A stretch of 63,774 nt of DNA, filler included, from Syncephalis fuscata S228 (GCA_025786725.1; 5 parts of 5 records of this genome joined end to end with filler, not necessarily neighbours in it), one strand, 5' to 3'. Shown: positions 9,353 to 36,979, counted from the whole stretch's first letter. Program-made: numbers and translations. The notes: generated by a model from the letters alone, not told the origin.

Positions 9353-9541
9353 TATGTTGATATTAGATGTCACGTAGTAATGTATATGTTTTTGTCTCTT
9401 TCTATGTGTACGTGTATCTGATGTACTTTATGTTTTATTATTATTTAAACAAACTCTAATACTATGAATATGAGCAACAATATTAATATTTTGTATTTGA
9501 ATATATACACCAAGGTAGTTTTCAGAGTTTTGACTAAACAG

Positions 9542-10322: not shown

Positions 10323-10387
10323 TAATGATTAAAACATAGTCATTCATATATTACATAGAATCGTGTAGTAAATAGTCTATTAGTTAA

Positions 10388-13300: not shown

Positions 13301-15002
13301 AATCGCGGCCATCCTCTTAGTGGGGTGCCAAATCCAACGGCCTGTGCCGCTAATTGCGCACCTAGCTGAGTGCGGAAGCGTATAAACGCTGTTGATGCAA
13401 TATGGTAGCGTGTAGTTTGATTATTGGCCTTGGTGCGTACTTTTTCTAGCTCTCGTTCTTGCTTACAAAGTGCAAGTGCAAGATTTAAAATTAAATCACG
13501 CGATGGATCCAATGGCTCACCAGCCTCCATATTCATGATAGCACTATTACGCTGATCTACTGGAATATCATCACTAACATCGCCAGATTCGGGAGAAGCA
13601 TAATGATTGGGCTTATCACTTATTTTAACCATCGTTTCCTCTAGCTTTTCTAGTACTTGTGATTTTATATCATCGGTAGGTATAGCTGCATCAAATTTGG
13701 ATTTATCAATCATTTCTATATCTTGATTCGATTGTTGCTGTTTTCCTTTTGGCTGATTGTCAGTATTGCCGTTAACCTGGTCTTCATTGGTCTCTGATGG
13801 CTGTGACGGCTGTACTGGTGTTGATCGATGCCGACCAAATGGCCAAAACGACTGTTTTACTTGTGGCCGAACACCGCTAGTCACGTAATGACAAATGGCC
13901 GCCTCTAGTTGTTGATGAATTTTATCTCGACGTGTTTTCGCCAGACCGACCTGTATCGATCGACGTACTGTCAATACCGAGCGTAAGCCGCCAGGTACTT
14001 TACTGTAAATATGGCGCAATTGACGCTCCTGGTCAAATCGAATTTTAGCCGGCAGGCCTGTAATAAGCATAGTAGTGGCCTCAGGTCGTTTCCGATAGCC
14101 CGATGATGTAAGATAGGCATGACGAAGTCGAATATACACATTTAGTTCTCGCACCATATAGAACATGGCAATGCCTAATATTGGTCATGAGTTATGTAAT
14201 AGGCAATTATATTGTACTTACAAACAAATAGATATGAGCAGACGACATGGCCCCAAAAGCGCCGCGGATTAGTTACATTGCCTACTGTCCACTCCTGTAC
14301 ACCATCAAGATCTCCTTGATCAATGATATTTAACGGCATCATAATAGGAAGACCAATAATGCAATAAATGATAAATAAACGGCGAGATAGACGAAGAAAC
14401 CGCAAAAACATATAGGCATCAAGTCCTGCATTGCGTAGCAGCTCACGGTCTGGTGTTCTAATTGTTACGATAACCCAGTGATAAAATTGACCAGTAATTG
14501 AGCGTGGTGCCTGAACGTATTTAGCAATCATACGTGGTGCGTAGTAATAAACGTTCCATGGCCGGACTAGCGAGAATACGAGGTAGAGAAAAACGCCAAC
14601 AATAACATTTACCGTCAACGAGGAGGTAAAAGCGGCTGTTGAGCTGCTAACAGCAAATTGCTGCTCTGCTGGGAACCAGCCAGGAATATCTTTGTTTCGC
14701 TTGCTTAGCTTAGCAGGTACATTTGATGTGCCTTGCTGTATCACAAGTTCATTGCTATCGCGTGGAAGTGATTTTAAAAATAATAAATTTGATTTGATCG
14801 ATGAAGACAACACGGACGTATTATCTGGCTGCTGCACCAGTGCCACATTGTTATCGACATCGGTAGCATAGGCAAATTGAATAGACAGTAGACTGACAAT
14901 GGCGATTATTTTCATCAGATGAAATATCATCGACGGCCGTATAGCTGAAATACCGTCGACCATGGTATCTGGCCGGCTATTCCATCGTCGTAACGAAAAC
15001 AT
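10388..15002 (-). CDS. CSC1/OSCA/TMEM63 (DUF221) channel paralogue with long disordered C-terminal insert, multi-exon
   Basis: Motifs 'YYAPR', 'AGLDAYMFLRFLR', 'FWGHVVCSYLF', 'STAFIRFRTQLGAQLAAQ', 'EDVLWRNL', 'MPNSSTFFINYVLL', 'PVIWIPQD'. The exons correspond to ORFs 14175-15002, 13168-14166, 12433-12747 and 10388-12196. Confidence 0.92.
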
Positions 15003-15903
15003 ATATTGAGCCGCTACCGATAGAGTCGCCGTATTAGTTGTGTATATAGCTTAGATAGTAAAAACTAAGACGGTACTAGCGCAAAATACCAAATACATGA
15101 AATAGTGTGTGCAAAAAGTACTAGACCGTTGGTTTTGTTTTTCGCTTCTTAGGATTAGTTATCTGAAACTGCTACCATAAACGAGTCAAACAATACAAAA
15201 CCAGTATTACAATAAATATAGAACAAAAAATAGCACTGAAAAACACGTCTTTCCTTCTATCCAAACGAAGAAACACTAATAAGCAGAAAAAGTAAGACTG
15301 TACTGGAAAGACGTTTTGAAGGTATTGTTACGAAGAAGAGTTATGCGAGTATTTGTTCACAGGAACGTACAAACGGGAACGGAAAAATGCACACCCGTGA
15401 ACTTTTAAAGACCCAAATAGTCAACTGTTATAAAATTGCAATAAGATAATCAACCACCATTAAAGTAAAGTGTAGACTATTGTTTGTTGTCGGTGTATAT
15501 TGAATAAAAACGGCTTTTTACAAAGCTTACAGGTATTTGAGATAAAAAACGATAGGCTTTGAGGAGAATGGGTATGTTATGTTTGATACAATCTTCACCA
15601 GAGACATGACCCAATATGGATACAACGTGTCTGGTCCGATCTTCTTGGCTTTACTTTGCTACTAAACTATTGATACCAAAATGTAGCTAATTATGGTACG
15701 TTAGTATTTGCAAATACATTTTAATTAATAAAATAAATGAACTGTATGTCATAACATGGCAAAACAGACTAAATAAATAAATAACATCATATCTCTATAC
15801 TCTTATCTTCATATGCCACAACTTTTATAAAGCCGTAGATGACGCTATTTAAAAAAGGCGTTTCAATTTTATTTAAGTATAACAATTGATGGAAAACTAA
15901 AAA

Positions 15904-19106: not shown

Positions 19107-19455
19107 GGTGGCAGAACGGTGGACTGTGGTGGCAGAACGGTGGACTGGTGGTGGCAGAACGGTGAAATGGTGGTGGCAGAACGGTGGAACTGATGGTGGC
19201 AGAACGCAAAATGGTGGTGGCAGAACGGTGAAATGGTGGTGGCAGAACGGTGGACTGATGGTGGCAGAACGGTGAAATGGTGGTGGCAGAACGGTGAAAT
19301 GGTGGTGGCAGAACGTGAAATGGTGGTGGCAGAACGGTGAAATGGTGGTGGCAGAACGGTGAAATGGTGGTGGCAGAACAGCGGTATTCCACCATCTCAC
19401 CGTTTTGCCAGTTCACCGTCCTGCCACTACCATTCTGCCATTCCGCCATTCTGCC
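19107..19455 (+). repeat. 22-bp minisatellite (GGTGAAATGGTGGTGGCAGAAC and variants) followed by degenerate inverted units
   Basis: About 12 tandem units at 19107-19380, then C-rich degenerate reverse units at ~19389-19455. Confidence 0.95.
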
Positions 19456-22400
19456 TTGACAGTCTCTGACTATCGACTATCAGTCTACATTTAAAGCATT
19501 TGCCGTTTCTTTGAAGCTACAGGTAAGCATTGTTATGTTTTATTAAATATGTATTATTGTGCGGACAAAGACGGTGTAGCACAAATAGCCATGTACGCTT
19601 TTATAATCGGCTGTTTACTATGGTAAGACAACTGGCGCTGCTATGTAATAAATACTTGCTTATTTTTACTTCAAACTACTTACCATTTAATCAACTGTTA
19701 TTTTTACATAGATATTTAGGTATGCAGTGTTAGTGTTGCTGTTTGCATTCATGCACTGTGTTTTGTTTTCAAATAATACTAGCTTTTAACAAGATCACAA
19801 GCTTCTTCCTTGCCGTGTTATAATATGGAATAATATAGATTCAAATGAATGGTCAAATAAAGTGTAAAATAATGGCAATAAAGGTATAGTATGCGTATTG
19901 CACAAGCAATCAAGTAAAATATACAAACAATACGGCGAGTAACAAATAAACGAGTTTTATCAATAAGACATGATGAGTATAGTTTAGAATAGAATCAATG
20001 GATAAAATAATAGTGAAGATATACATAGACGATTAGTAAGTACAATAAATTGAACCTATAGCAATAAAGCTAGCGGCAATAAAATACCTGCTGTAAATGG
20101 GTTGTGCTTATTATATGATCGATCGATATATGACTTAATAAATACAGAATAGTAATGATATGGGTGGATAGAAGGCATATGCATACTAAATACTAAATCT
20201 ATAATGACGAGTATTTTAATGGCTAATGCCATCCACCACACAGTTTCATGCCCAATAGATTGGATGTTGTTAAATTTAGCCATTTATCTTTCAAATCATA
20301 CTAGATCATCAGCAAATTGTTTAATATTATTATACTAGGCTTAACACAATTAAACCAATCAAACGAACCACTATTGCTATTATTAAAATGACCAGTGTGG
20401 GTGTAGCTTTATAGAATGTAACTATTTTTAGTATACTAGCAGTATAGTACAATTCAAATAATTGAATGGCATAACAAAGCTACTAGACACTATACTAATG
20501 TTGATTTATAGCATATTTATTTAGTTAAAGATGCTAAATGTTAAAGCGTTTATAAAAAAGTAGCTGTATTTGCTACTACCTATAATCAGGTTAGGCATGG
20601 CATTACAATGGGAATCAGCACTATGATATAAGCATCATGTCAAATAGTTGACCTCCATATACACACACATTCAACGATACAAGAAGGCAACAGCAATGGC
20701 AATGTCTATCAGCGAGTATAAGTACGACAACCACCGCTCGTTATAGTTGCAATGTTGGTGGTAATATTCAACTGACATCAGCGGCGATCAATGTCAATAC
20801 ACGCCAGCAAGCTGCACATATTAGCTACTGTATTAATAAGCAGTATAGTTAAGCAACATACAGCAACATACAGCAGCATACAGCAACATACAGCTGTTGA
20901 AACGCATGTTAGTACGCATGCAACACCAGCGATTGATTCTATGCTATAATTACAAAATAAATAGTAGCGTCATTATGGTTGATTGTAATCAAAATACGTG
21001 CCGACGGCCAATATATATTAAATATTGTTAATATTTAATGCTAATATTGCCATTTCTATTTGTGGTGCCTTTTCACGATTTTTCCAACATATGTCAGTTA
21101 TATGCGCCAATGCGTCAACGCCATGCGGTTATAGTAGATGCTATTACGTATTTCTAGCTGTATGATTGATAGAATCAAGAATTGGTAAAGTTAATTAATA
21201 AAGGCTATAATAGTCCTTTTTTTGTTATTTTGACAATAAAAGCCCACACAAATACTAATTAAAAAATGTATCGATTGCTTAATAGATAGCCAATTGCAAC
21301 TTGACAGTATCAATCCCTGTAGCCATAATTGACCGTTAACAATTGCGTCGATTTGCTAGTTATGTCGGCCAACCAACAGCGTCGGTGACATGATATAATT
21401 AATAAATATATTAATGATTGGTATTGCATATAGCTACAGTATGTGTGTAATAGCACAATAGCACGCAATGGTACACCGTCAGCCACACGTGCTGTGAACG
21501 GTATGCTAATCATGTACATTGGTTGTTTTATTAGCATTGGTGGTGGCGTGTATCAAGTATAACCGGCATCATTGGTAGATCATGTTATGCGGCATTGCCA
21601 CTGGCAACTATACAGATGCTATCAGTCATCCGTAATAGTACTGACAATGTTAATGGCTGTGAATGTGTTATACAGACAATGGCGATTTTGGCTACATACC
21701 GTATACAATTATGTAGTGGAGTGTATAACAATAACAGCCATTGGTATAGTATTGTCATTGGTGCGCACACCATACTGTTGCTGGTATACAAAAGCAAATC
21801 TTATGCATAGTCATCAGTTAGTAACAGTGCATATTATGCTGCCACTTGCTAAACGAGCAGACGTTAACTGTCCATGTTATTTGTAGATATGTTTCAAATT
21901 GGCAAGTACCAACACTAGGTTTACTACTTGTGTCGCCAATTACCCAGTAACAACTGGCATGACAATTCTCAATAGCCAGCATTAGTATACATGTTTATAT
22001 TGACGATCGGTAATCTTCAACAGTAATTTCAATTGTGGCATTTATTAAACACAGCTCACTACTGTCGTTGGCAATACAAATAGCAACTATTTTGCCAATT
22101 CCTAGTTGTTGCACTGCAATACATAGCATTGGTTTACAATGGTAGTAAGCTGTATAAATAGCGCTCACTAACTGTTAGTATCGGTAGCTATATCATGCCA
22201 ATGATGCACGCAGTATATTCAACACTAACTGTCGACCAGTAACCAGCAATACACAATAACAGATAGCACTAATGTAGCCATATGATTAACTGATACCCAT
22301 GTTACATGTCTATTAACCTATAGCCGGCTATGGAAATAATCAAATATCCATACTTTATCGGTGTTGACGCGCGATTACTAGCATATTGCTTAACAGAATA

Positions 22401-22666
22401 TTGCTATACTATTATATTGGCTATTGTTAATCAGTTGATACAGCTAATCAGCAGGTATCCGTAAATACTATGCAACCAGCTAGTCGGTAAACAACATGGA
22501 TTAATAGCGTTTGGCCAGCTATATATATATATTGAAAACATGCATGGTGCTTAGTTGTCCATTTGCTAATAGCGTTTGCTATTAATTTCTACTATTTAGA
22601 TAGATATTAACAATACGATCTTGTCAATAGAATAATGCTAATTTCTATAGTAATCATGAGCAATAT

Positions 22667-23744
22667 TACAATGTTGCCATTGCCAGCTAACTAATACAGC
22701 TGGCTATACGTTGATGGCAACAGTAATTTAATGTTTTCATGTTCACTACTGACCATTGACGGCTGCTTGATTGTTTATTAATGCTTATATATATATTATA
22801 CAATTATCCATGTTAGTAATGTAGCTGTTTATATGTTATAATTGATACATATTCATTATATAGCGCTCTGTAATAACGTTCATTGGCACTATTCCAGCGT
22901 CAAAACTATTAACTTTGTCATAACATCGTTGGAAACTTTAAATAGCTGTATTAGCTCAATATCGATCTGTACCAAAATAGTTGCCATGTACATGCACAAT
23001 AGTCTTTTTGTAATGCTCTATAGTCTGCAATACATTAATCGAATGATCTATGTCAAAGTATCACTATCATATCTATATGCTAAATATACTCATACATGTT
23101 TTGGTTATTGCCAAGGTATGGGCCAATTTCACTGTCGACTCGTTTATTGCACCGTTTAATCAATTTACCCATCACATCGGCTTTAATACTAAGAAGCCGT
23201 CCCAATCTTGTTGCCTTCTTTTGAATATGCTTAATTCAACGGAACATTTTACTTTGTTCTGTTTACTTACAAATCAACAACAGCTCATCAATACTACCAA
23301 TTCCCAGTTGTAGACTGCCAATAAGCAGTGCAAATCCATCAGATATATTGTCGAAATTACATAATCGATTACGCCAGGTAGAACAACAACATAAGCGATC
23401 AGCTACTGAATACAACGTAATATGCTGTGTGCATGTGACGCTAATCGATGATGAAATAAAATGATACCTTTACGCATCAATGCCACAAATACTGACATTG
23501 GTTCTAAATAATTAGCACTCTGTGTATTAGTATAGAATGAACGGAAACAGAATAGATCATAGCTACAAGGTAGCTAGCATTTCTTACGTGTATCCTCGAG
23601 CTTAATAGCATCAGTCGTCAATGGATGTATACGGAATATCTAGTATTCAATGTACTTTAATTCTGATTAATTGTCTATTCTATATCATTCATTAACAAAT
23701 GCACGTATTTCTGAATCAGTGGATGTTACTGCATCCACTTGGAA
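22667..23744 (-). pseudogene. Decayed CorA-family Mg2+ transporter (ALR1-like), left-arm copy
   Basis: Mirror copy of 29093-30170. Confidence 0.85.
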
Positions 23745-25281
23745 CAAAGCTTTGCGCAATAGATTGGCTGTCTAGTGTATATCCATTAATATTATGGCTT
23801 CATTTTTCGCAGAAGCAATGCAGCTTTTCAATAATGCTGTCGCCGCATATTTGAACTAATATCAACCGACATTGCTGAAGCAAAGCTGTTACACCGGTCA
23901 GCTGTACTTAATAGCGCTGAATCAAATTCAACATCCTCCAGTCATAAATCCAATTTTCAGCGCTTGTATACAAATTTAATTGAGCAGTGCCGCGTATTGT
24001 ATAGAAGTGGTCGCTGATCTAGCCGTTATTGGCATATTACGCCATAAATAAGCTGACAGTCTAAATTAACCACCAACAAAAGCTGTCGATTGAATAATCC
24101 TTGTAACTTCAAAATAAACAAAACACGGATTTACCAGAATATACGATATACAATACAGTTTAATGATTTGTAGCGGCGTGTAGCAATAGCTGACGGCGTA
24201 ATAAAAATCTCGACCCAATTAACAAGCGTGCTTATATACCACAAAAGGCTATGTAGCCGCTGCAACAACTGTAGCTTGCTATTTACAAATATTCAACAGC
24301 ATAGAAGAAGGCCATGCTGAATAGACTGAATGAAAGTAGACATGAACGACAAGCGGCAGATCTTACAACAAATAAAGCTACTAACAAGTGAACCACTGTA
24401 ACAAACTGCGCACGTTTATTAGAAAACAAAGCACTACGCAATAAGACGAGTAGACACGCTAAAGTGTATAGACAGGAAAGTAACTGCTGCAGTGTATATG
24501 GACCAATGAGAGATAAGAAAGGAATGAGCTGAGCTTTACAACCAATAGACCTAGCGCCAAATAAACAGCAGTTTTGAGTAGCGCATGGCTATCATATGAC
24601 AGAACGATACAGAATGAAACGAATATATAAAGTATGAATAGCAGTGGTATAGCTACTAAGCATATATGCATGAGTGAATGAGCGACATTAGTCGACATTT
24701 ATAAATAATAAAGCTAGAACAGAAATAAACATATTTTTGGATAGAGCAAGGCTATACGAGTATAGAGTGATGTATAGAATGATAAATGTACGGTAAGAAA
24801 GCATGTAAAACGACATCAAAGCTATAGTGTATATAGCGCAATGAATGGAGAGAGAAAAGTGTATTGGGACAAACAGATGATAGAATGTACCTAGTATGTT
24901 ATAAAATGGTATATAGAGGTGTGGGATATAAAAGAATGGTATACGTGAATAGAGGATATATGCATACTGGATAATGAATCTATAATGATGAGTATTTTGA
25001 TGATAGACGTCACTCACCGCCCATCATCATGTTCAATAGACTGGATGTTATTAAAAATAGTCATTTGACCACCAAGCAAACAACAAATGCGATGATGTGA
25101 TAATTAAATAAAACTCACCATTTGTCCCTATCTTTAGTAGAATAGATGTGTAGTCCAATTACGCAAATATTATTAAAAAATCATTTAACACAAATTATAA
25201 TAAATGGTCAATAAGTCGTTTAATGTTAATGCGATAGCTTTAATACAAACAAGACAGCTGAATAAGATAGCATTGCATTAA

Positions 25282-27029
25282 TTATTTTTGAAATATTTTA
25301 GACAGTTCTTTCTTTACCGCCTTGTTTGCATCGCTTAAACTTCCTGTAACAATGTTTGCTAAGCCTTGCAGATGTGTGTCCAATATCTTGTTGCCGATAA
25401 TTAGAATATGATCTTGGCCGTCGAACTGTTTAAGAATAAGCTTTATGAACACCAAGACTTTATCTTCTTTGCATTGGTTTGCAATGTTTTGCACATCTGA
25501 CATTTGAAGCTTGGCCTTTCGCCCATTATTGATTACAGCAGTTGCAATTGTTTGGAACAACTGCGATCCGATTTTTGCTTGTGTTAATCGAGAAATTTCA
25601 TAGTCCGCCAATGTCCAAATGGTAAAAGGGCGGCGAGTGACAGAATTGGTTGCCGCTGAGCTTGAGCGGCAAAGTGTGTATGTCGAAGGACAATGGAACT
25701 TCGACCGAACCTGGCGTAACTGTGACATGAAATCAAGATAATCAATGTGACAACATTTATTGCCCTTATTGAAAAGGCATATTGATTTTTCAATGCTTTT
25801 AGAGTCCAAATAAACCCGTGGATCTTTTAGACTAATGTCCTTTGTACTGGGCCCGAGCTGGATAATCTGTTGATTATTTCTTAATAGGACACTCGACGTC
25901 ACAAGAAGATTTGAAGAATGCGTTCCTATTAACAGTCTTTTTGAGTTGTTGTATGTGTCCACCACAACTTTAATTCCATTATAGCGAAGGTCGTCATCAT
26001 CTGGCACAGATGGTGAACGCCACGCTGTCTCATGATGTACATCGATGGTACATCTGCGGCCGTACGCCTCCACGCAGTTGATCAGTAGAATTTGCTTATC
26101 TTCAACAAGTATAGCATTGCTGAATAATTGCGCTGATACGTAGCGCATTTGTGGCCAAATATGCCAGTCTCTTTGTAATAGCTCGGCGATTTCATCGTTC
26201 ATTTCAATGATGTCACATTGTTTCAGTTTTTCACCAAACAGCCCATGTTGCAAGCAATGACGTAAACGGTTGTCAGCTGTCTTGCTACTATTAAGGCAGG
26301 CATTGTCTGCTGCTGAGGGTGTAATCAGTGGTGCAATAATTTCCCCTTTTGGCTGAGCAAAGAGAATCCGTGAGATTGCTTCAGAGACAGCCAGCACGTG
26401 AAACGTTGAACGCCCATCTCCAGTTGTGAGCGACAGAGGATGTAACTTGCTAGATTTTGCAACTAGTTTTGCCTTCTGTTGGCATTTTGGCGACGCTTGA
26501 AGCGCGTTGAATGCACTAAGAATTGCATCATCGTAGGAAAGCGATGCATCCGCCAGTGGTGTGCTATGAGTAGGAGTAGGAGTAGAATATAGCTCCTTTC
26601 CAATCTTCTGCTTTTTTTGGTGAACAGTGATACGTCGTCATCACTGTTTTTAAAGCTTGTCGCTTTTTTATCATCTTGATAAAGTCGTTTTGCTCCGACT
26701 TGAGCTTCCTTGTTTTCCATCTCGAAATAAGTAATATAAGCTTCGTGCTTTTTTAGATGCTTTTTGAATCCTTCCGTTGTAGCGCAACTGCCAGTGCAAT
26801 TTTTAAACGGACATCCAAAACGCCCATCTTGTTTAGTACAAACAAAAAGTAGTTCTGTCGTAGAAGATCGTTAAGTGGATTGATTTATTCAGCGTAAGCT
26901 ACATTACTTACCTTCACCTTTCCATACGTTTATTTGTGCCTTGTGTTCTTCAAAGTCGTGCTTCCTACGGCTGGCTAACGACGGAAAACCCTTTCCACAC
27001 GTTGGACAACGTGATTTATTCGCGGTCAT
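25282..27029 (-). CDS. Orphan protein with two N-terminal C2H2 zinc fingers (~563 aa if a 1-nt frameshift at 26612-26618 is corrected)
   Basis: ATG at 27029. ZF1 CPTC-x12-H-x4-H. Intron 26855-26911 (GTAAGT…CAG). ZF2 CPFKNC-x12-H-x3-H. One extra A in the A7 run joins this to the open frame that ends in ORF 25282-26397. Confidence 0.75.
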
Positions 27030-27423
27030 GATGTTTAGAAGAATAACTGTTTGATTAGTTTCTTTATTCACAAAAATACTAGTTTTATTCCAAAAATATA
27101 GTTTATGCACTAGCAAATGGCATTGCTTTTGTTTAAAATTCGACTTTATAAATGCGTCGAATTAGCAAATATTAAGCTTATAAAACCATAATTACTTTAA
27201 AATTTTTAGAGATTAATTGAAGATAAAGACAGCTTTAAAACCTCAAACATAATAAAGGGTACAGCATATTTACAGTTGGTGTTCTTTGACTTCTAAGCCG
27301 GTTAAGTGGGCAGAATAATTTGAATGTTTATAAAAAAAATGTTTTTTAATTAAATGATAATTGCAATTTAGTGTTAGATGACTACATTAATAGTATTCGC
27401 GCAACTGACCTACACACACGTTC

Positions 27424-27637
27424 TAGTGAACATGAAATTAAAAGTACCTGACGTCAGGGTCCAAAATACCGCCATCATAGATTTATTATTTAGTATGCAT
27501 ATATTTTTAATCTAATAATATCATTAAGATGTATCTTTACATCCTACTCTTAGTCAATGACAGGTTGAACACTTATATTTATTATGCATTTCAATCAGCT
27601 TCACTCAGTCCACTCAGTGCGCTATAGCTTTATTATA
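27424..27637 (+). repeat. ~215-bp direct repeat, copy 1
   Basis: Matches 33932-34144. The central ~95 bp are identical. Confidence 0.9.
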
Positions 27638-29092
27638 ATTTGTGTTAAATGACTTTTTAATAATAATCGCGTAACTGAACTAGACATCTATTCTATTGAA
27701 CATGGGACAAGTGGTGGGTTTTGTTTAATCATCACATCATCACATTTGTTGTTTGCTTGGTGGTCAAATGACTATTTTTAATAACATCCAGCCTATTGAA
27801 CATGATGATGGGCGGTGAGTGACGTCTATCATCAAAATACTCATCATTATAGATTCATTATCCAGTATGCATATATCCTCTATTCACGTATACCATTCTT
27901 TTATATCCCACACCTCTATATACCATTTTATAACATACTAGGTACATTCTATCATCTGTTTGTCCCAATACACTTTTCTCTCTCCATTCATTGCGCTATA
28001 TACACTATAGCTTTGATGTCGTTTTACATGCTTTCTTACCGTACATTTATCATTCTATACATCACTCTATACTCGTATAGCCTTGCTCTATCCAAAAATA
28101 TGTTTATTTCTGTTCTAGCTTTATTATTTATAAATGTCGACTAATGTCGCTCATTCACTCATGCATATATGCTTAGTAGCTATACCACTGCTATTCATAC
28201 TTTTTACTTTATATATTCGTTTCATTCTGTATCGTTCTGTCATATGATAGCCATGCGCTACTCAAAACTGCTGTTTATTTGGCGCTAGGTCTATTGGTTG
28301 TAAAGCTCAGCTCATTCCTTTCTTATCTCTCATTGGTCCATATACACTGCAGCAGTTACTTTCCTGTCTATACACTTTAGCGTGTCTACTCGTCTTATTG
28401 CGTAGTGCTTTGTTTTCTAATAAACGTGCGCAGTTTGTTACAGTGGTTCACTTGTTAGTAGCTTTATTTGTTGTAAGATCTGCCGCTTGTCGTTCATGTC
28501 TACTTTCATTCAGTCTATTCAGCATGGCCTTCTTCTATGCTGTTGAATATTTGTAAATAGCAAGCTACAGTTGTTGCAGCGGCTACATAGCCTTTTGTGG
28601 TATATAAGCACGCTTGTTAATTGGGTCGAGATTTTTATTACGCCGTCAGCTATTGCTACACGCCGCTACAAATCATTAAACTGTATTGTATATCGTATAT
28701 TCTGGTAAATCCGTGTTTTGTTTATTTTGAAGTTACAAGGATTATTCAATCGACAGCTTTTGTTGGTGGTTAATTTAGACTGTCAGCTTATTTATGGCGT
28801 AATATGCCAATAACGGCTAGATCAGCGACCACTTCTATACAATACGCGGCACTGCTCAATTAATTTGTATACAAGCGCTGAAAATTGGATTTATGACTGG
28901 AGGATGTTGAATTTGATTCAGCGCTATTAAGTACAGCTGACCGGTGTAACAGCTTTGCTTCAGCAATGTCGGTTGATATTAGTTCAAATATGCGGCGACA
29001 GCATTATTGAAAAGCTGCATTGCTTCTGCGAAAATGAAGCCATAATATTAATGGATATACACTAGACAGCCAATCTATTGCGCAAAGCTTTG

Positions 29093-30170
29093 TTCCAAGT
29101 GGATGCAGTAACATCCACTGATTCAGAAATACGTGCATTTGTTAATGAATGATATAGAATAGACAATTAATCAGAATTAAAGTACATTGAATACTAGATA
29201 TTCCGTATACATCCATTGACGACTGATGCTATTAAGCTCGAGGATACACGTAAGAAATGCTAGCTACCTTGTAGCTATGATCTATTCTGTTTCCGTTCAT
29301 TCTATACTAATACACAGAGTGCTAATTATTTAGAACCAATGTCAGTATTTGTGGCATTGATGCGTAAAGGTATCATTTTATTTCATCATCGATTAGCGTC
29401 ACATGCACACAGCATATTACGTTGTATTCAGTAGCTGATCGCTTATGTTGTTGTTCTACCTGGCGTAATCGATTATGTAATTTCGACAATATATCTGATG
29501 GATTTGCACTGCTTATTGGCAGTCTACAACTGGGAATTGGTAGTATTGATGAGCTGTTGTTGATTTGTAAGTAAACAGAACAAAGTAAAATGTTCCGTTG
29601 AATTAAGCATATTCAAAAGAAGGCAACAAGATTGGGACGGCTTCTTAGTATTAAAGCCGATGTGATGGGTAAATTGATTAAACGGTGCAATAAACGAGTC
29701 GACAGTGAAATTGGCCCATACCTTGGCAATAACCAAAACATGTATGAGTATATTTAGCATATAGATATGATAGTGATACTTTGACATAGATCATTCGATT
29801 AATGTATTGCAGACTATAGAGCATTACAAAAAGACTATTGTGCATGTACATGGCAACTATTTTGGTACAGATCGATATTGAGCTAATACAGCTATTTAAA
29901 GTTTCCAACGATGTTATGACAAAGTTAATAGTTTTGACGCTGGAATAGTGCCAATGAACGTTATTACAGAGCGCTATATAATGAATATGTATCAATTATA
30001 ACATATAAACAGCTACATTACTAACATGGATAATTGTATAATATATATATAAGCATTAATAAACAATCAAGCAGCCGTCAATGGTCAGTAGTGAACATGA
30101 AAACATTAAATTACTGTTGCCATCAACGTATAGCCAGCTGTATTAGTTAGCTGGCAATGGCAACATTGTA
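29093..30170 (+). pseudogene. Decayed CorA-family Mg2+ transporter (ALR1-like), right-arm copy, intron remnants retained
   Basis: Manual translation gives 'IFRIHPLTTDAIKLEDTRKKC*', 'CFRSF..NYLEPMSVFV..GIILFH', 'DNISDGFALLI', 'RLLSIKADV..LIKRC', 'EIGPYLG', 'HGNY', 'NDVMTKL', 'IVPMNVIT..MN'. These are collinear with fungal Alr1 motifs (FGIHPLTAEDI, LSGKADV, HxNYLAQ, VPLNVITGLFGMN). Multiple stops and frameshifts; the GMN motif is lost. Confidence 0.85.
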
Positions 30171-33100
30171 ATATTGCTCATGATTACTATAGAAATTAGC
30201 ATTATTCTATTGACAAGATCGTATTGTTAATATCTATCTAAATAGTAGAAATTAATAGCAAACGCTATTAGCAAATGGACAACTAAGCACCATGCATGTT
30301 TTCAATATATATATATAGCTGGCCAAACGCTATTAATCCATGTTGTTTACCGACTAGCTGGTTGCATAGTATTTACGGATACCTGCTGATTAGCTGTATC
30401 AACTGATTAACAATAGCCAATATAATAGTATAGCAATATTCTGTTAAGCAATATGCTAGTAATCGCGCGTCAACACCGATAAAGTATGGATATTTGATTA
30501 TTTCCATAGCCGGCTATAGGTTAATAGACATGTAACATGGGTATCAGTTAATCATATGGCTACATTAGTGCTATCTGTTATTGTGTATTGCTGGTTACTG
30601 GTCGACAGTTAGTGTTGAATATACTGCGTGCATCATTGGCATGATATAGCTACCGATACTAACAGTTAGTGAGCGCTATTTATACAGCTTACTACCATTG
30701 TAAACCAATGCTATGTATTGCAGTGCAACAACTAGGAATTGGCAAAATAGTTGCTATTTGTATTGCCAACGACAGTAGTGAGCTGTGTTTAATAAATGCC
30801 ACAATTGAAATTACTGTTGAAGATTACCGATCGTCAATATAAACATGTATACTAATGCTGGCTATTGAGAATTGTCATGCCAGTTGTTACTGGGTAATTG
30901 GCGACACAAGTAGTAAACCTAGTGTTGGTACTTGCCAATTTGAAACATATCTACAAATAACATGGACAGTTAACGTCTGCTCGTTTAGCAAGTGGCAGCA
31001 TAATATGCACTGTTACTAACTGATGACTATGCATAAGATTTGCTTTTGTATACCAGCAACAGTATGGTGTGCGCACCAATGGACAATACTATACCAATGG
31101 CTGTTATTGTTATACACTCCACTACATAATTGTATACGGTATGTAGCCAAAATCGCCATTGTCTGTATAACACATTCACAGCCATTAACATTGTCAGTAC
31201 TATTACGGATGACTGATAGCATCTGTATAGTTGCCAGTGGCAATGCCGCATAACATGATCTACCAATGATGCCGGTTATACTTGATACACGCCACCACCA
31301 ATGCTAATAAAACAACCAATGTACATGATTAGCATACCGTTCACAGCACGTGTGGCTGACGGTGTACCATTGCGTGCTATTGTGCTATTACACACATACT
31401 GTAGCTATATGCAATACCAATCATTAATATATTTATTAATTATATCATGTCACCGACGCTGTTGGTTGGCCGACATAACTAGCAAATCGACGGCAATTGT
31501 TAACGGTCAATTATGGCTACAGGGATTGATACTGTCAAGTTGCAATTGGCTATCTATTAAGCAATCGATACATTTTTTAATTAGTATTTGTGTGGGCTTT
31601 TATTGTCAAAATAACAAAAAAAGGACTATTATAGCCTTTATTAATTAACTTTACCAATTCTTGATTCTATCAATCATACAGCTAGAAATACGTAATAGCA
31701 TCTACTATAACCGCATGGCGTTGACGCATTGGCGCATATAACTGACATATGTTGGAAAAATCGTGAAAAGGCACCACAAATAGAAATGGCAATATTAGCA
31801 TTAAATATTAACAATATTTAATATATATTGGCCGTCGGCACGTATTTTGATTACAATCAACCATAATGACGCTACTATTTATTTTGTAATTATAGCATAG
31901 AATCAATCGCTGGTGTTGCATGCGTACTAACATGCGTTTCAACAGCTGTATGTTGCTGTATGCTGCTGTATGTTGCTGTATGTTGCTTAACTATACTGCT
32001 TATTAATACAGTAGCTAATATGTGCAGCTTGCTGGCGTGTATTGACATTGATCGCCGCTGATGTCAGTTGAATATTACCACCAACATTGCAACTATAACG
32101 AGCGGTGGTTGTCGTACTTATACTCGCTAATAGACATTGCCATTGCTGTTGCCTTCTTGTATCGTTGAATGTGTGTGTATATGGAGGTCAACTATTTGAC
32201 ATGATGCTTATATCATAGTGCTGATTCCCATTGTAATGCCATGCCTAACCTGATTATAGGTAGTAGCAAATACAGCTACTTTTTTATAAACGCTTTAACA
32301 TTTAGCATCCTTTAACTAAATAAATATGCTATAAATCAACATTAGTATAGTGTCTAGTAGCTTTGTTATGCCATTCAATTATTTGAATTGTACTATACTG
32401 CTAGTATACTAAAAATAGTTACATTCTATAAAGCTACACCCACACTGGTCATTTTAATAATAGCAATAGTGGTTCGTTTGATTGGTTTGATTGTGTTAAG
32501 CCTAGTATAATAATATTAAACAATTTGCTGATGATCTAGTATGATTTGAAAGATAAATGGCTAAATTTAACAACATCCAATCTATTGGGCATGAAACTGT
32601 GTGGTGGATGGCATTAGCCATTAAAATACTCGTCATTATAGATTTAGTATTTAGTATGCATATGCCTTCTATCCACCCATATCATTACTATTCTGTATTT
32701 ATTAAGTCATATATCGATCGATCATATAATAAGCACAACCCATTTACAGCAGGTATTTTATTGCCGCTAGCTTTATTGCTATAGGTTCAATTTATTGTAC
32801 TTACTTAATCGTCTATGTATATCTTCACTATTATTTTATCCATTGATTCTATTCTAAACTATACTCATCATGTCTTATTGATAAAACTCGTTTATTTGTT
32901 ACTCGCCGTATTGTTTGTATATTTTACTTGATTGCTTGTGCAATACGCATACTATACCTTTATTGCCATTATTTTACACTTTATTTGACCATTCATTTGA
33001 ATCTATATTATTCCATATTATAACACGGCAAGGAAGAAGGCTTGTGATCTTGTTAAAAGCTAGTATTATTTGAAAACAAAACACAGTGCATGAATGCAAA

Positions 33101-33386
33101 CAGCAACACTAACACTGCATACCTAAATATCTATGTAAAAATAACAGTTGATTAAATGGTAAGTAGTTTGAAGTAAAAATAAGCAAGTATTTATTACATA
33201 GCAGCGCCAGTTGTCTTACCATAGTAAACAGCCGATTATAAAAGCGTACATGGCTATTTGTGCTACACCGTCTTTGTCCGCACAATAATACATATTTAAT
33301 AAAACATAACAATGCTTACCTGTAGCTTCAAAGAAACGGCAAATGCTTTAAATGTAGACTGATAGTCGATAGTCAGAGACTGTCAA

Positions 33387-33861
33387 GGCAGAATGGCGGA
33401 ATGGCAGAATGGTAGTGGCAGGACGGTGAACTGGCAAAACGGTGAGATGGTGGAATACCGCTGTTCTGCCACCACCATTTCACCGTTCTGCCACCATCAG
33501 TCCACCGTTCTGCCACCACCATTTTAGCGTTCTGCCACCACCATTTCACCGTTCTGCCATCATCATTTCACCGTTCTGCCACCATCAGTCCACCGTTCTG
33601 CCACCACCATTTTAGCGTTCTGCCACCACCATTTCACCGTTCTGCCATCACCATTTCACCGTTCTACCACCACCATTTCACCGTTCTGCCACCATCAGTC
33701 CACCGTTCTGCCACCACCATTTTAGCGTTCTGCCACCACCATTTCACCGTTCTGCCACCACCATTTTAGCGTTCTGCCACCACCATTTCACCGTTCTGCC
33801 ATCACCATTTCACCGTTCTGCCACCACCATTTCACCATTTTGCCACCACCATTTTACCGTT
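33387..33861 (-). repeat. 22-bp minisatellite cap of the right arm (~18 C-rich units preceded by degenerate G-rich units)
   Basis: Units GTTCTGCCACCACCATTTCACC / …ATCAGTCCACC / …ATTTTAGC. Confidence 0.95.
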
Positions 33862-33931
33862 GAACAATTGAACGGTTGAACCGTCGGACTCACTTCCACC
33901 ACTTTTGACTCCACTCTCTTTTCATTCCTTT

Positions 33932-34144
33932 TAGTGAACATAAAATTAAAGTACCTGACATCTGGGTCCAAAATACCATCATCATAGATTTATTATCCAG
34001 TATGCATATATTTTTAATCCAACAATATCATTAAGATGTATCTTTACATCCTACTCTTAGTCAATGACAGGTTGAACACTTATATTTATTATGCATTTCA
34101 ATCAGCTTCACTCAGTCCGCTCAGTGCGTTATAGCTTTATTATA
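33932..34144 (+). repeat. ~215-bp direct repeat, copy 2
   Basis: Matches 27424-27637. Confidence 0.9.
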
Positions 34145-34179
34145 GTTATTTTTATTATTATTAACTGTTTATTACAATT

Positions 34180-34760
34180 ATTAACCATTTAATGTGATTT
34201 GTGTCAAACGGCTACTTTTGATATTCGCGCAACTGGCCTGCACATTTGTTCTATTGAACATGGGGACGGGTGGTGAGTTTTATTAACGATCAAATCATCA
34301 CATTTGGTGTGATTTGGTGGTTAAATGGCTATTTTGATTATTTACGCGTTTGAACTAAACATTCAACCTATTGAACATGGAGCTGGGTGGTGAGCGACAT
34401 CAAAGTTTAAAACACTTGTCATTATAGATTTATTATCCAGTATGCATATATCTCTATCTACCTACACCACTCCCTTTTATTCCGCACTTCTATGTATCAT
34501 TCTACGACATACTGGACACATTCTGTTCATTAAGCACACCAGCACACTCATTCCCTCCTTGCGTTATATGCACTATAGTTTGACATCGTTTTATATGTCA
34601 TTTTACACTCGCCCATCTATGCTCAATCCAAAACTGGTTTTATTTTTGTTCTAGCGTTATTATTAACAACTGTCGACTAATGTCGCTCATTGATCATGCA
34701 TATATGCTCAGTAGCTATACCACTGCTGTCCATACTTTTTACTTTGTATATTCGTTTTAT
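34180..34760 (+). repeat. Dispersed repeat family A copy
   Basis: Diverged homologue of 27640-28225 (shared TGTCGACTAATGTCGCTCATT, GTAGCTATACCACTGCT, CATACTTTTTACTTT). Confidence 0.8.
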
Positions 34761-36979
34761 TATCCAGTAAATACGCGCTAGCTATTACCGTTGTCTGTTT
34801 GGTTCTAGCACCATTATTAGAAAAGTTCACGCAAGTTGCTTATCTGCTCATGCATATATGCTCGATAGCTTTAACAAAGCTAGTTGTCTTTTAACTAGCA
34901 TAGCTGATAGCTGTTATGCTATTTTACCGTACAGTTACTATGCGCCATCAATAACTACTGTCAGCTTGACGCCAGCTTAATATTGACAAGTTTGACTCGT
35001 CCGCTTAGTCATTCCTTCTCAAGGCGCACTATAGCTTTAATGCTGCTACTCACACAATTACTTTTGGTATTTTATTTGCTCCATATTATTGTATGCTTAA
35101 TGGCTATGCTTTATTTGCAGAAGCTATACGTTCCTTGTTAGCTGTTTGTTGCAAAGTTTAGCTCTGAGCACTTCTTTTACTCTTTGCACACAAACGCGCA
35201 AGTAGAATAGCCTTCTTACACTGCTAGTGCTCTTTTTGCTGTTTTCCAGTGCTGATATGTTGCAATGGTATCGAACGGGCCAGCGATGAACTGGTATAAG
35301 CTATTATACCAAATAAAGCTTGTTATTACAAAATAGATATTCGCTATGGGTGTTATGTATACGAGCTTTAAAAGTGTCGTATAGCTTATTGCAGGGTAAT
35401 CATGTATTGCGCTATAGCTACTTGAGCACAAGGACAAAGTGTACGTATATTTACCATGTGGCCGTAGACAGTGCTGGCTACTCTATTCGACACAGTTAAA
35501 AGCAATAATAAACTTGGCCAAAAACAATTTGCTTTAAAGATTTTATTAGATGGATTGCATTAGTATTCAACATATAAGCCATTGGTATTTACTGTAGCTA
35601 CAAGCTTGAAACTGGTCCCATTTAGCTGCTTTGCGTGCCGCCTAAATGATCGGCATTGTTTGAAATAAAGCCATAACTGATATTGCCAAATAGACAGATT
35701 TACTTGCTATGCTACATGTAAAGTTTAGCATAGATCATTTTTACGCTTAGTCGGTTAAGCCGTGTAATCTAGATTTAATCCATCAGCTTATCGCGTTGTA
35801 AAGAGCTTACCAATATTAATGTTCAGACAATATAATGACAGCAATAAAGACTGTTTTGCAATAAGTGTACAAAAAAACACACGGTTTACTACATATTACA
35901 CTAATAGTTACATGTACTGAAGATTCTACTGGAATGGTTGTAGCTGCTTATACGGAAGACTAAGAGCAATTGCGTAGTACATTGGTCATAGACGGTTTTA
36001 GACGACTCATGTTTTATTACGACATTTTCCACAACTATCACAATACATAAGCTGGCTTTACCGCTCCTCCGAACCAACATTGCACCTTTATCTTCTCTTT
36101 CTACTCTTTACCACTCGATATACGCTACACTCATTCGCCCTTACTGCCATTTGTTGTCCAATATGCTTTGCACTTGCTAGCCGTCTAATGATTACAAGAT
36201 CACTGCTGGTTGCTGCTATATGTACTAAGGTCGGTAAACGGGCGTGGGAGGTGCGATGCAGTTGTGCCTTTTGGCTATGAAGCACTGGATATGCAGTGTT
36301 CTAGAAGCTATATATCACGCAGTGTGTACCCCAGCATGCTGTAGAAGGCGCTTGTCTGCACATAGTTGATTGGTCTTTTGTATAGTAACATTGGTACGCT
36401 TACCGTGTGTTTGTTTGCGAGGTTGCCTTGCTGAGTATCTGGCTGTTGAGGCGACATAAGGTTTGCGCTTGAAGATATCTGATATCTGATGGTGCAGAGC
36501 AAATGTTGTTTGGACAACCACTACTTATTGCGGTGTAGTCAAGCAGCAAACATCATTGGCACATGTGGCTCATCTCGTTTACTGACCCTCTTCAATAGAT
36601 ATAGATTTAAGCGATATTTAGATTTGGCAAGAACAGGGCCACAATATGCTGTACAGTCATCCGGTTTGTACTAGTCTATCATTATTTATGTATTTCTTTG
36701 TTTAAATAAATAAATGTAGCATTTCTTATTTATTAACATACTACTATTAGTTGCGTTCATATAAATACAGACATCTTCCCATTTAATAATAGTACTAGTT
36801 GTTTCTGCTATTGTTATTACACTGATAATAAACAACCTATTAAGCCATTGAATGTGCTTTGAAGGCAACGATTAAATTTGATGCATCCATGCAGTTGAGC
36901 TAGACAATTGCTCTGTTGAACATAATAACGAGTGGTGGTGAATCAAAGTTTAAAATATTTATTGGCATAGATGTATTAT

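What the first reader, a model, noticed from the sequence alone, without database searches (positions are those of the whole stretch)
19107..33861. ~14.7-kb palindrome: 6-kb arms, minisatellite caps, one orphan zinc-finger gene in the loop
Seen: arms 19107-25204 and 27629-33861 are near-identical around a 2424-bp spacer that contains exactly one gene. There are true differences between arms: substitutions (~20710 vs ~32129; ~20351 vs ~32490), an 8-bp indel (~24630 vs ~28200), a different minisatellite unit order, and an abruptly more diverged innermost ~170 bp. I recognised no DDE transposase, tyrosine recombinase or polymerase. Known: foldback-type elements have very long TIRs with terminal tandem subrepeats, and some yeast centromeres (K. 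phaffii, C. tropicalis, S. pombe) are IR + central core. Inference: a candidate new giant foldback/cargo-carrying element or invertible locus, in which the central ZF protein could recognise the terminal 22-mers.
Basis: partly seen in the sequence, partly recalled or inferred. Interest (0 to 1): 0.85.

Follow-up and report, generated by a model that had tools for sequence, protein, structure and literature searches.

The report
Giant foldback transposon, glycosylase-like gene
The 14.7-kb palindrome is real and sits in the fungus-parasitic fungus Syncephalis fuscata; it is an oversized copy of an apparently undescribed family of foldback-type mobile elements of zygomycete fungi, whose only gene encodes a zinc-finger protein with a DNA-glycosylase-like fold instead of any known transposase.

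Summary
Two 6.1-kb arms differ by only 2 substitutions over 5.6 kb. They end outwards in inverted 22-mer arrays and enclose a 2.4-kb spacer with one gene. The piece is a complete 17,873-bp contig of Syncephalis fuscata (GCA_025786725.1).

The gene is not an orphan. It encodes two C2H2 fingers plus a conserved core, and belongs to a large family (357 clusters at E<=1e-30) in Mucorales, Umbelopsis, Mortierellomycota and Syncephalis.

In Mucor mucedo, Zychaea, Circinella, Parasitella and a second S. fuscata paralogue, the homologue again lies next to or inside inverted repeats that carry lineage-specific tandem subrepeats. M. mucedo has at least 8 copies on 8 contigs; three that I read stop being alike exactly at the repeat ends. 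One lineage is 89-95% identical across distant Mucorales, which suggests horizontal transfer.

The core models confidently (pLDDT 86.7) as an alkyladenine-DNA-glycosylase (AAG) fold, Z 9.0. No RNase-H/DDE, tyrosine-recombinase or HUH domain was found.

Best reading: a new foldback-type element family with expanded arms here.

A second contig joins the palindrome to a similar flank by its other end. That is either a true inversion or a still larger (>=22 kb) palindrome. This is unresolved, and the catalytic mechanism is untested.

The parts
19107..19379 (+). Left 22-mer tandem array (12.5 copies), cut by the contig end
   Evidence: TRF. Unit order is listed.
19380..25204 (.). Left arm of the inverted repeat (non-coding)
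   Evidence: No ORF above 115 aa and no Pfam hit in the mirror-image right arm.
24613..25214 (-). Module X, left copy: the gene-proximal part of the arm. It is shared at 70-77% with flank copy X' and with the second S. fuscata paralogue locus.
25205..27628 (.). Unique spacer (loop) of the palindrome
25282..27029 (-). Single gene: ATG at 27029, intron about 26856-26912, stop codon at 25282-25284. The protein is about 530 aa.
   Evidence: The C-terminus agrees with homologues. All family-invariant residues are present.
26943..27011 (-). C2H2 zinc finger 1 (residues 7-29)
   Evidence: Weak Pfam zf-C2H2 hit. Residues 1-78 of the model superpose on DNA-bound tandem fingers such as CTCF and WT1, Z about 4.
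26745..26813 (-). C2H2-like zinc finger 2 (residues 54-76)
   Evidence: Sequence pattern; aligned finger in homologues.
26612..26618 (-). Run of 7 A at which the reading frame shifts. DNA runs X2 and X3 show one more A, which restores a continuous frame.
   Evidence: (table 4, place 26611). Contig 46 reads through here (P0001).
25600..26214 (-). Conserved core (residues 233-437) with an alkyladenine DNA glycosylase (AAG/MPG)-like fold
   Evidence: Model pLDDT 86.7. VIA Z 8.0-9.0 to seven AAG entries, with the next unrelated hit at 4.9. Foldseek probability 0.97. Atlas TM 0.61 to a PF02245 cluster.
27421..28226 (+). Module X, right copy (includes 208 nt of the spacer upstream of the gene)
27629..33462 (.). 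Right arm of the inverted repeat
33463..33861 (-). Right 22-mer array (18.1 copies), inverted relative to the left array
33862..33905 (.). About two degenerate units of a 16-mer repeat. In contig 311 this repeat forms a 29-copy array at the same place. It shares a CCGTT...CATTT core with the 22-mer.
33929..34761 (+). X': a 74%-diverged direct copy of module X in the flank, a relic of an older family member

Best explanation
The locus is a real genomic palindrome built around a member of a previously undescribed family of foldback-type mobile elements of zygomycete fungi.

The family unit is one gene bracketed by inverted repeats that contain arrays of short, lineage-specific tandem subrepeats. 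The gene encodes two N-terminal C2H2 fingers, an AAG-glycosylase-fold core and a helical tail.

In this S. fuscata copy the ancestral inverted module (X, about 0.6-0.8 kb) has been extended outwards. The extension came from duplication, or is kept up by gene conversion. The arms are now at least 6.1 kb, almost identical, and carry inverted 22-mer arrays.

Proposed working, all inferred:
- The fingers bind the subrepeat arrays.
- The glycosylase-fold core, with its invariant E281/D290 and near-invariant Y283/H292/E294 cluster, makes base-excision or strand lesions there. These lesions start excision or recombination.
- The long inverted arms and arrays also act as substrates for homologous recombination, giving inversion, array length change and arm homogenisation.

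Shown: the structure, family membership, the association with inverted repeats, multicopy discrete ends in M. mucedo, and the fold.

Inferred: DNA binding to the arrays, catalysis, and mobility of this particular copy.
For: Structure:
- The structure is confirmed.
- The piece is a whole contig of S. fuscata GCA_025786725.1.

Family:
- 11 homologues in the word-indexed search.
- The profile search finds 2676, 1018 and 357 representative clusters at E<=1e-3, 1e-10 and 1e-30.
- Members come from Mucorales, Umbelopsis, Mortierellomycota and Syncephalis.

Association with inverted repeats and subrepeats:
- M. mucedo L004: repeats 9809-10873 / 12725-13952 with 13-18-mers.
- Zychaea L006: 8704-10095 / 12035-13415 at 98.6% with 12-mers.
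- Circinella L007: 9288-10785 / 12856-14302 with 13-21-mers.
- Parasitella L005: a 127-nt inverted repeat, with assembly gaps that abut the 12-mers.
- The second S. fuscata paralogue (30% identical) is followed by an X-like module and a 6.9-kb foldback without a gene, with 30-mer arrays.

Mobility:
- There is no shared synteny among the species.
- M. mucedo has 8 members at >=90% identity on 8 contigs.
- Three copies, in different gene neighbourhoods, stop being alike exactly at the repeat ends.
- One lineage is 89-95% identical in protein, and 96% in DNA over 2 kb, across Parasitella, Zychaea, Rhizopus and Apophysomyces.

Protein:
- The model has pLDDT 86.7.
- The AAG fold scores Z 8.0-9.0 over about 158 of 200 residues, with the next unrelated hit at 4.9. 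Foldseek and the ESM Atlas agree.
- No Pfam, NCBIfam or PDB-sequence match to any transposase.
- The window copy keeps every invariant residue.

Local dynamics:
- The inner array has 18 copies here and 44 in contig 46.
- A third arm copy sits in another context on contig 311.
Against: - No target-site duplication or empty site could be shown. The left end of this copy lies in an assembly break.
- In M. mucedo all three copies are flanked by TA on both sides. That could mean mobilisation in trans by a Tc1/mariner-type enzyme.
- Two homologues (Apophysomyces ossiformis, Hesseltinella) have no inverted repeat.
- The AAG resemblance is at fold level only. No sequence profile detects it, and Z 9 is only modestly above the tool's stated background of 7-8.
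- If the two contigs describe one locus, the inverted repeat continues beyond the 22-mers. The 22-mers would then not be the element's termini.
- In the Mucorales copies the arrays lie close to the gene. Here they are 5.5 kb away.
- Only one or two gene-bearing copies of this lineage are seen in the S. fuscata assembly, so current mobility here is unproven.
- Contigs from public reads were too fragmentary to bridge any junction.
Confidence: 0.58

Rival explanations
1. Passenger-gene model. The elements are non-autonomous long-repeat elements moved in trans by a conventional transposase, for example a Tc1/mariner-type enzyme. The zinc-finger/AAG-fold protein is cargo that helps the element. For example, it might excise modified or damaged bases from its own repeat arrays to escape silencing, as TET/JBP genes carried by fungal KDZ-type transposons are thought to do.
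For: - All three M. mucedo copies are bracketed by TA and begin CAG..., the classic Tc1/mariner signature (my knowledge).
- No known transposition chemistry uses an AAG fold.
- Transposon-borne base-modifying enzymes exist in fungi (PMC12730594, listed; abstract only read).
Against: - The 3.9-4.4-kb M. mucedo elements contain nothing but this gene.
- The gene stays coupled to inverted repeats with subrepeats in lineages only about 30% identical, each with different repeat units. Cargo riding on changing non-autonomous vehicles would not be expected to do this.
- The Zychaea copy shows no TA at its repeat ends.
Confidence: 0.2
2. Static-locus model. In S. fuscata the gene is a relic or domesticated family member lying in a recombination-prone, segmentally duplicated region, possibly subtelomeric because it sits at the end of a 150-kb contig. 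The 6-kb-plus arms are simply flanking DNA copied in inverted orientation and kept identical by gene conversion. The 22-mers are ordinary minisatellites with no role.
For: - There are three versions of the same flank and at least three arm copies in three contigs.
- Window and contig 46 differ by <=3 substitution events over the 2.4-kb spacer but by 10 over 2.5 kb of flank.
- The truncated array of contig 46 is 100% identical to the window's right array. This fits one locus whose inverted repeat runs on beyond the 22-mers.
- The arrays are 5.5 kb from the gene, unlike in the Mucorales copies.
Against: - The gene is intact with all invariant residues.
- The order gene, X, body, array recurs at the unrelated paralogue on contig 13.
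- The 16-mer and 22-mer arrays share a core and sit next to X modules, which argues that arrays belong to the family's architecture.
Confidence: 0.14
3. Centromere of the inverted-repeat-plus-core type, as in Komagataella phaffii or Candida tropicalis.
For: Gene-poor, AT-rich, near-identical inverted repeats around a short core.
Against: - The core holds an intact, conserved, intron-containing gene of a mobile family.
- The same architecture occurs at several places per genome in relatives.
- The locus is at a contig end and is duplicated in at least two further contigs.
- There are no CENP-A or kinetochore data.
Confidence: 0.03
4. Assembly artefact: a palindromic chimera from missed SMRTbell adapters or template switching, or a haplotype mis-join.
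For: - The left arm ends at the contig end.
- The arms are almost identical, and the one-base differences look like homopolymer consensus errors.
- String-graph assemblers tend to fold near-perfect palindromes, so part of the arm identity may come from pooled reads.
Against: - A 2.4-kb unique spacer and a 165-nt inner zone at 90% identity cannot arise from a fold-back read.
- Both arm/spacer junctions recur in diverged paralogous copies.
- An independent 150-kb contig contains the same two arms and spacer.
- Homologues in other genomes and assemblies show the same architecture.
Confidence: 0.04

Closest known systems
Drosophila Foldback (FB / FB-NOF) elements and related foldback transposons (Tetris, Tm1)
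   Same: - Very long inverted terminal repeats built partly of short tandem subrepeats.
- Gene-less foldback derivatives lie next to gene-bearing copies (Circinella L007 6467-9299; S. fuscata L012 11938-18854).
- Array length varies between copies.
- The repeats can drive inversions.
   Different: - The encoded protein has no MULE/Phantom-type DDE transposase. It has C2H2 fingers plus an AAG-glycosylase-like fold.
- The hosts are zygomycete fungi.
- The arms here reach at least 6.1 kb.
- The arrays sit 5.5 kb from the gene in this copy.
Galileo (P-element superfamily) of Drosophila
   Same: [quoted passage not shown] Structural dynamism, and inversions generated by ectopic recombination (PMC3573991 and PMC4168063, abstracts seen).
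   Different: Galileo encodes a THAP + RNase-H-fold P transposase and makes 7-bp target duplications. Neither feature is found here.
Human alkyladenine DNA glycosylase AAG/MPG (Pfam PF02245)
   Same: - Residues 233-437 superpose on almost the whole catalytic domain: chain residues 80-295, Z 8.0-9.0, rmsd 3.5-4.0, about 158 aligned.
- An invariant Glu-x-Tyr followed about 11 residues later by a conserved His resembles AAG's Glu125/Tyr127/His136. The AAG numbering is from memory and not verified here.
   Different: - No sequence-profile similarity, and 11-13% identity in the superposition.
- The domain is fused to zinc fingers and a helical tail.
- It is encoded by a multicopy mobile element rather than a housekeeping repair gene.
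- Activity is untested.
Inverted-repeat centromeres (K. phaffii, C. tropicalis) and flip-flop loci (2-micron plasmid, Ogataea/Komagataella MAT inversion)
   Same: Near-identical kilobase inverted repeats around a short unique core. Possible existence in two orientations.
   Different: - The core carries an intact gene of a mobile family.
- There is no site-specific recombinase.
- The orientation polymorphism is not demonstrated.
Fungal DNA transposons carrying base-modifying enzymes (KDZ/Plavaka-type elements with TET/JBP dioxygenase)
   Same: A transposon-borne enzyme of a DNA base-modification or repair fold in fungi (PMC12730594, abstract).
   Different: Those elements also encode a recognisable transposase. 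Here the glycosylase-fold protein is the only gene.

Membership tests
Foldback-type DNA elements | Long terminal inverted repeats containing short tandem subrepeats | tested here: met
   Window. Relatives.
Foldback-type DNA elements | Several dispersed copies with discrete, shared ends (mobility) | tested here: met
   Met for the M. mucedo lineage: 8 members on 8 contigs, and 3 copies whose likeness ends at the same terminal bases in different gene contexts. For the window's own lineage in S. fuscata it is inconclusive: there are 2-3 related contigs that may be one locus.
Foldback-type DNA elements | Target-site duplication | tested here: inconclusive
   TA lies on both sides of all 3 M. mucedo copies, but it cannot be separated from the repeat itself without an empty site. 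There is no duplication at the Zychaea repeat ends. The window copy lacks its left flank.
DDE/RNase-H transposase superfamilies (Tc1/mariner, hAT, MULE, P, PIF, and others) | Transposase with an RNase-H-like fold and a DDE/D triad | tested here: not met
   No Pfam or NCBIfam hit in 59 members. Fold searches return only zinc fingers, AAG and generic helical bundles. Residues 126-232 were not searched on their own.
Tyrosine-recombinase elements (Crypton, Starship) and HUH elements (Helitron) | Tyrosine-recombinase or HUH/helicase domain | tested here: not met
   No such Pfam family or fold match.
AAG/MPG DNA glycosylases (PF02245) | The fold of the catalytic domain | tested here: met
   Z 8.0-9.0 to seven AAG entries covering chain residues 80-295, with the next unrelated hit at 4.9. 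Foldseek probability 0.97. Atlas TM 0.61 to a PF02245 cluster.
AAG/MPG DNA glycosylases (PF02245) | Match to the family's sequence profile | tested here: not met
   PF02245 is not reported for any of 59 members at E<=10. No AAG chain appears in the profile search of PDB sequences.
AAG/MPG DNA glycosylases (PF02245) | Catalytic Glu and base-stacking Tyr/His in equivalent positions; glycosylase activity | not testable with these tools
   E281 and D290 are invariant, and Y283, H292 and E294 nearly so. No residue-level superposition is available. The AAG numbering is from memory.
Inverted-repeat centromeres | Gene-free central core, one per chromosome, CENP-A bound | tested here: not met
   The core holds an intact conserved gene. 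The structure is duplicated across contigs. CENP-A binding is not testable here.
Palindromic assembly chimera | Perfect fold-back with no unique spacer, and junctions unsupported elsewhere | tested here: not met
   There is a 2.4-kb spacer and inner ends at 90% identity. The junctions recur in paralogous copies and in a second contig.

The most novel reading that the evidence does not exclude
This family is a new class of eukaryotic DNA transposon whose own mobility enzyme is not a DDE, tyrosine, serine or HUH recombinase. It is instead a zinc-finger-targeted protein with a DNA-glycosylase fold. The protein would start excision, inversion or copying by base excision and strand breakage within arrays of its binding sites, much as glycosylase-dependent breaks arise in the tandem-repeat switch regions of immunoglobulin genes.
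Probability: 0.3. Interest if true: 0.95.

Novelty: new variant of a known kind. Interest (0 to 1): 0.78.

Why it matters
Every established class of eukaryotic DNA transposon is defined by a small set of enzymes: DDE/RNase-H, tyrosine recombinase, HUH, or protein-primed polymerase with integrase.

Here a widespread family has the anatomy of foldback elements. It is multicopy and seems to be horizontally transferred among early-diverging fungi. It carries none of those enzymes, and its only gene has a DNA-repair glycosylase fold fused to zinc fingers.

If that protein moves the element, it is a new transposition chemistry and a possible sequence-programmable DNA-lesion tool. If it is cargo, it is a new example of a transposon carrying a base-excision enzyme, possibly aimed at host silencing marks in lineages rich in adenine methylation.

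In either case the family explains a class of unassemblable palindromes and gaps in zygomycete genomes. It also gives a marker for horizontal transfer among Mucorales and their mycoparasites.

Tried and rejected
- Rfam and tRNA scans of the whole piece found nothing.
- Pfam on ten arm ORFs found nothing.
- Sequence-level searches for the core domain returned only zinc-finger hits: Pfam, NCBIfam and the PDB profile.
- The protein-language-model atlas search of residues 225-440 gave only scores of 0.84 or less, with nothing useful.
- The first structure model, from 11 sequences, was too poor (pLDDT 63.9). It was replaced by a 59-sequence model.
- Public reads: five runs from two studies hold parts of the spacer, but only as short Logan contigs. 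No contig bridges an arm/spacer junction, no spliced joint appears, and depth is not interpretable. The run guessed to be RNA covers only the gene body, with a 3' bias. One of its contigs crosses intron 1 unspliced. Transcription is therefore not shown.
- Looking up an arm ORF found only contig 46, which gives no copy number.
- A sensitive search for arm-like sequence in the flank beyond X' found none.
- A search for array motifs inside the arms or spacer found none.
- A relic of the gene on contig 311 was sought and not found.
- Literature searches found no description of this protein family or element, and nothing relevant on S. fuscata.
- The idea that the 22-mer is a telomere repeat was dropped. 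The repeat is also internal and inverted, and a related 16-mer replaces it in contig 311.
- My early reading, 'the palindrome is flipped between two contigs, hence invertible', was downgraded.
Searches and models used the deposited protein P0012 residues 1-531, or single exons by reference.
Full report
**1. What is there**

The piece 19107-36979 is one complete 17,873-bp contig of the Syncephalis fuscata assembly GCA_025786725.1. S. fuscata belongs to the Zoopagomycota and parasitises Mucorales. The deposited protein P0012 lies on a contig of exactly that length, and its sequence is the window's gene.

The inverted repeat is real. Region 27629-33737 pairs with 25204-19107 at 99.1% over 6113 nt. 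A 22-mer array of 12.5 copies runs into the left contig end. An inverted array of 18.1 copies lies at 33463-33861.

A base-by-base comparison of the arms gives, over 19400-25039:
- 2 substitutions (20351/32489 and 20710/32129);
- 7 one-base indels;
- one 7-bp indel (24628 versus 28204-28210).

The innermost 165 nt drop to about 90% identity, and similarity stops at 25204/27629.

The arms are AT-rich. They have no ORF above 115 aa, no Pfam hit, no tRNA and no Rfam family.

**2. The gene**

On the minus strand the reading frame runs from the ATG at 27029 to the stop codon at 25282-25284. It has one short GT...AG intron at about 26856-26912.

The frame shifts at a run of seven A (26612-26618). 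The depositor's model bridges this with a second 62-nt intron. Contig 46 reads straight through, and contigs of two DNA runs show one more A here. The shift is therefore probably a homopolymer consensus error.

The depositor's model also adds a 130-residue tail spliced from the left arm. Homologues end where the ORF ends, so that tail is spurious.

I used P0012 residues 1-531, or single exons by reference.

**3. Not an orphan**

A word-indexed search found homologues at 31-35% identity in Apophysomyces, Mucor, Parasitella, Zychaea, Rhizopus, Circinella, Hesseltinella and Modicella.

A profile search of 1.84 billion cluster representatives found 2676 hits at E<=1e-3, 1018 at E<=1e-10 and 357 at E<=1e-30. 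The weakest hits may be finger-only matches.

Named members add Umbelopsis, Phycomyces, Rhizomucor, Sporodiniella, Dissophora and Lobosporangium. They also include a second S. fuscata protein, P0054, which is only 30% identical to the window's protein.

**4.

I fetched the loci of seven homologues. Their gene neighbourhoods share no synteny. Five of them have the gene beside or between inverted repeats that carry short tandem subrepeats:

| Locus | Inverted repeat | Subrepeats |
|---|---|---|
| Mucor mucedo L004 | 9809-10873 / 12725-13952 | 13-18-mers |
| Zychaea L006 | 8704-10095 / 12035-13415, 98.6% | 12-mers |
| Circinella L007 | 9288-10785 / 12856-14302, 79% | 13-21-mers |
| Parasitella L005 | a 127-nt inverted repeat; scaffold gaps begin at the same 12-mers | 12-mers |
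| S. fuscata contig 13, L012 | a 246-nt pair around the gene, then a foldback (below) | 30-mers |

Circinella also has a gene-less 1.3-kb-arm foldback (6467-9299), capped by the same 21-mers, directly upstream of the gene-bearing copy.

At S. fuscata L012 the gene is followed by a module 75-77% identical to the window's inner arm, which I call module X. Next comes a 6.9-kb gene-less foldback (11938-15149 / 18854-15549) with 30-mer arrays at its centre.

Apophysomyces ossiformis and Hesseltinella show no inverted repeat.

The subrepeat unit is different in every lineage, and the finger region is the least conserved part of the protein. This fits co-evolving recognition but does not prove it.

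**5. Mobility**

- M. mucedo has eight members at >=90% identity on eight contigs.
- Three copies that I read sit among different housekeeping genes. Their likeness stops at the same terminal bases: TA, then CAGCGGCTCC... at one end and the mirror image at the other.
- One lineage is 89-95% identical in protein across Parasitella, Zychaea, Rhizopus arrhizus, R. delemar and Apophysomyces spp. It is 96% identical in DNA over 2 kb between Zychaea and Parasitella. Meanwhile two members within S. fuscata are only 30% identical to each other.
- Patchy, multi-lineage, near-identical copies across families are the signature of a horizontally moving element.

**6. The protein**

With a 59-sequence alignment AlphaFold gives pLDDT 86.7. 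The model reads as follows:
- Residues 1-78: two C2H2 fingers. These superpose weakly on DNA-bound CTCF and WT1 fingers.
- Residues 84-121: disordered.
- Residues 233-437: match the whole catalytic domain of human alkyladenine DNA glycosylase.
- Residues 438-531: a helical bundle.

Support for the glycosylase match:
- Seven AAG entries score Z 8.0-9.0, with rmsd 3.5-4.0 and about 158 of 200 residues aligned. The next unrelated hit scores 4.9.
- Formyltransferase C-terminal domains, which share that fold class, appear at Z about 4.
- Foldseek gives probability 0.97 at E = 0.013.
- The ESM Atlas's nearest model is a methylpurine-glycosylase cluster with TM 0.61.

E281 and D290 are invariant. Y283, R285, H292 and E294 are nearly so. 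From memory this resembles AAG's Glu125-x-Tyr127...His136, but I could not verify the superposition residue by residue.

No sequence profile links the family to PF02245 or to any transposase. No RNase-H-like, tyrosine-recombinase or HUH fold appeared. Residues 126-232 were not searched alone.

**7. The local neighbourhood, and a caution about inversion**

Two other contigs of the same assembly carry related sequence.

*Contig 46* (150 kb) begins with the same palindrome. Relative to a near-identical flank, the whole unit is the other way round, and the arm-specific variants travel with the spacer out to the arrays. I first read this as a flip. Two observations weaken that reading:
- The two contigs differ by at most 3 substitution events over the 2.4-kb spacer, but by 10 over 2.5 kb of flank.
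- The truncated array of contig 46 is 100% identical to the proximal part of the window's right array.

Both are expected if the two contigs are overlapping views of one locus. In that case the flank itself would be present on both sides in inverted orientation, giving a palindrome of at least 22 kb with arrays of 44 and 18 units.

Against that reading:
- The window's left array matches the 44-unit array of contig 46 at only 93%.
- One arm of contig 46 has variants shared with a third arm copy.

I cannot decide between one larger palindrome and two loci or isomers of opposite orientation.

*Contig 311* has the same flank. There a 29-copy 16-mer array replaces the 22-mers. It is followed by 824 nt of unrelated sequence and a third arm copy read from its inner end.

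About two degenerate 16-mer units survive in the window at 33862-33905, and the 16-mer and 22-mer share a CCGTT...CATTT core. The flank begins with X' (33929-34761), a 74%-diverged direct copy of module X. The region is therefore a nest of related elements of different ages.

**8. Interpretation**

The most economical reading is that the window holds a gene-bearing member of a foldback-type element family. Its inverted repeat has been extended far beyond the ancestral X module and is kept almost identical by recent duplication or gene conversion.

How the family moves is not shown. I favour the element's only protein as its own DNA-processing enzyme, with the fingers on the arrays and the glycosylase-fold core making the initiating lesion. 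My reasons are that nothing else is encoded, and that the gene-repeat coupling survives divergence to 30% identity.

The main rival is trans-mobilisation by a conventional transposase, with this protein as cargo. The TA...CAG ends in M. mucedo point that way.

A static duplicated locus, a centromere and an assembly artefact are progressively less likely, for the reasons given under each rival.

**9. Limits**

- There are no raw long reads. The public runs are held only as short contigs, and none bridges a junction.
- There is no whole-genome search of the fungal assemblies, no empty sites and no biochemistry.
- Literature searches of the held library found no description of this family. That does not prove none exists, for example in Repbase.

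Noticed in passing
window 24928-25041 and 27778-27891 (also 20154-20285, 32555-32686, 34358-34462): A short module of about 130 nt inside the arms has Logan word depth of 120-555, against about 5 for the spacer, in all four runs. It is therefore a high-copy dispersed repeat of the S. fuscata genome. It occurs twice per arm at about 75% identity.
   Followed up: partly
L002 (contig JAHLTZ010000311.1) 4323-4776: A 29-copy 16-mer array (unit TCAACGGCTCAAATGT) occupies the position that the 22-mer array holds in the window, next to the same flank. The two units share a core. It is followed by 824 nt that match nothing in the other contigs.
   Followed up: partly
L012 (S. fuscata contig 13) 11938-18854 and 6696-7007: A 6.9-kb gene-less foldback with 30-mer arrays at its centre lies directly 3' of a 30%-identical paralogue. 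In addition, a 313-nt piece of that paralogue's coding region (10840-11152) is duplicated in inverted orientation upstream at 6696-7007.
   Followed up: partly
L007 (Circinella minor) 6467-9299: A gene-less palindrome (1.3-kb arms, 200-nt centre, 99.6%) capped by the same 21-mer subrepeats lies next to the gene-bearing copy. It looks like a non-autonomous foldback derivative.
   Followed up: no
L005 / L006 and proteins P0004, P0005, P0021, P0026, P0032: One lineage of the family is 89-95% identical in protein across Parasitella, Zychaea, Rhizopus and Apophysomyces, and 96% identical in DNA over 2 kb between Zychaea and Parasitella. This suggests recent horizontal transfer among Mucorales. Parasitella is itself a fusion parasite of Mucorales.
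   Followed up: partly
L005 (Parasitella) 5000-8159 and 12907-14932: Scaffold gaps (runs of N) begin exactly at the 12-mer subrepeat arrays on both sides of the gene. The repeat finder reported these N runs as a 2046-nt 'perfect' inverted repeat, which is an artefact.
   Followed up: yes
window 24688-25017 and the deposited models P0012 and P0013: The depositor's gene model extends the protein by 130 residues through exons in the non-coding left arm. The same spurious 131-aa 'protein' is annotated on contig 311. The contig 46 copy of the gene is annotated as a 372-aa fragment because of several one-base frame shifts.
   Followed up: yes
window 25357-26926, run X1: In the run guessed to be RNA, contigs cover only the gene body, with higher depth toward the 3' end, and nothing in the upstream 600 nt. 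One contig crosses intron 1 unspliced. This hints at transcription but does not show it.
   Followed up: partly
L006 8404-8578 versus L005 15212-15387: DNA just outside the Zychaea inverted repeat is 95% identical to a segment beside the Parasitella copy. The transferred unit may therefore be larger than the repeat-bounded unit, or both may sit inside another shared element.
   Followed up: no
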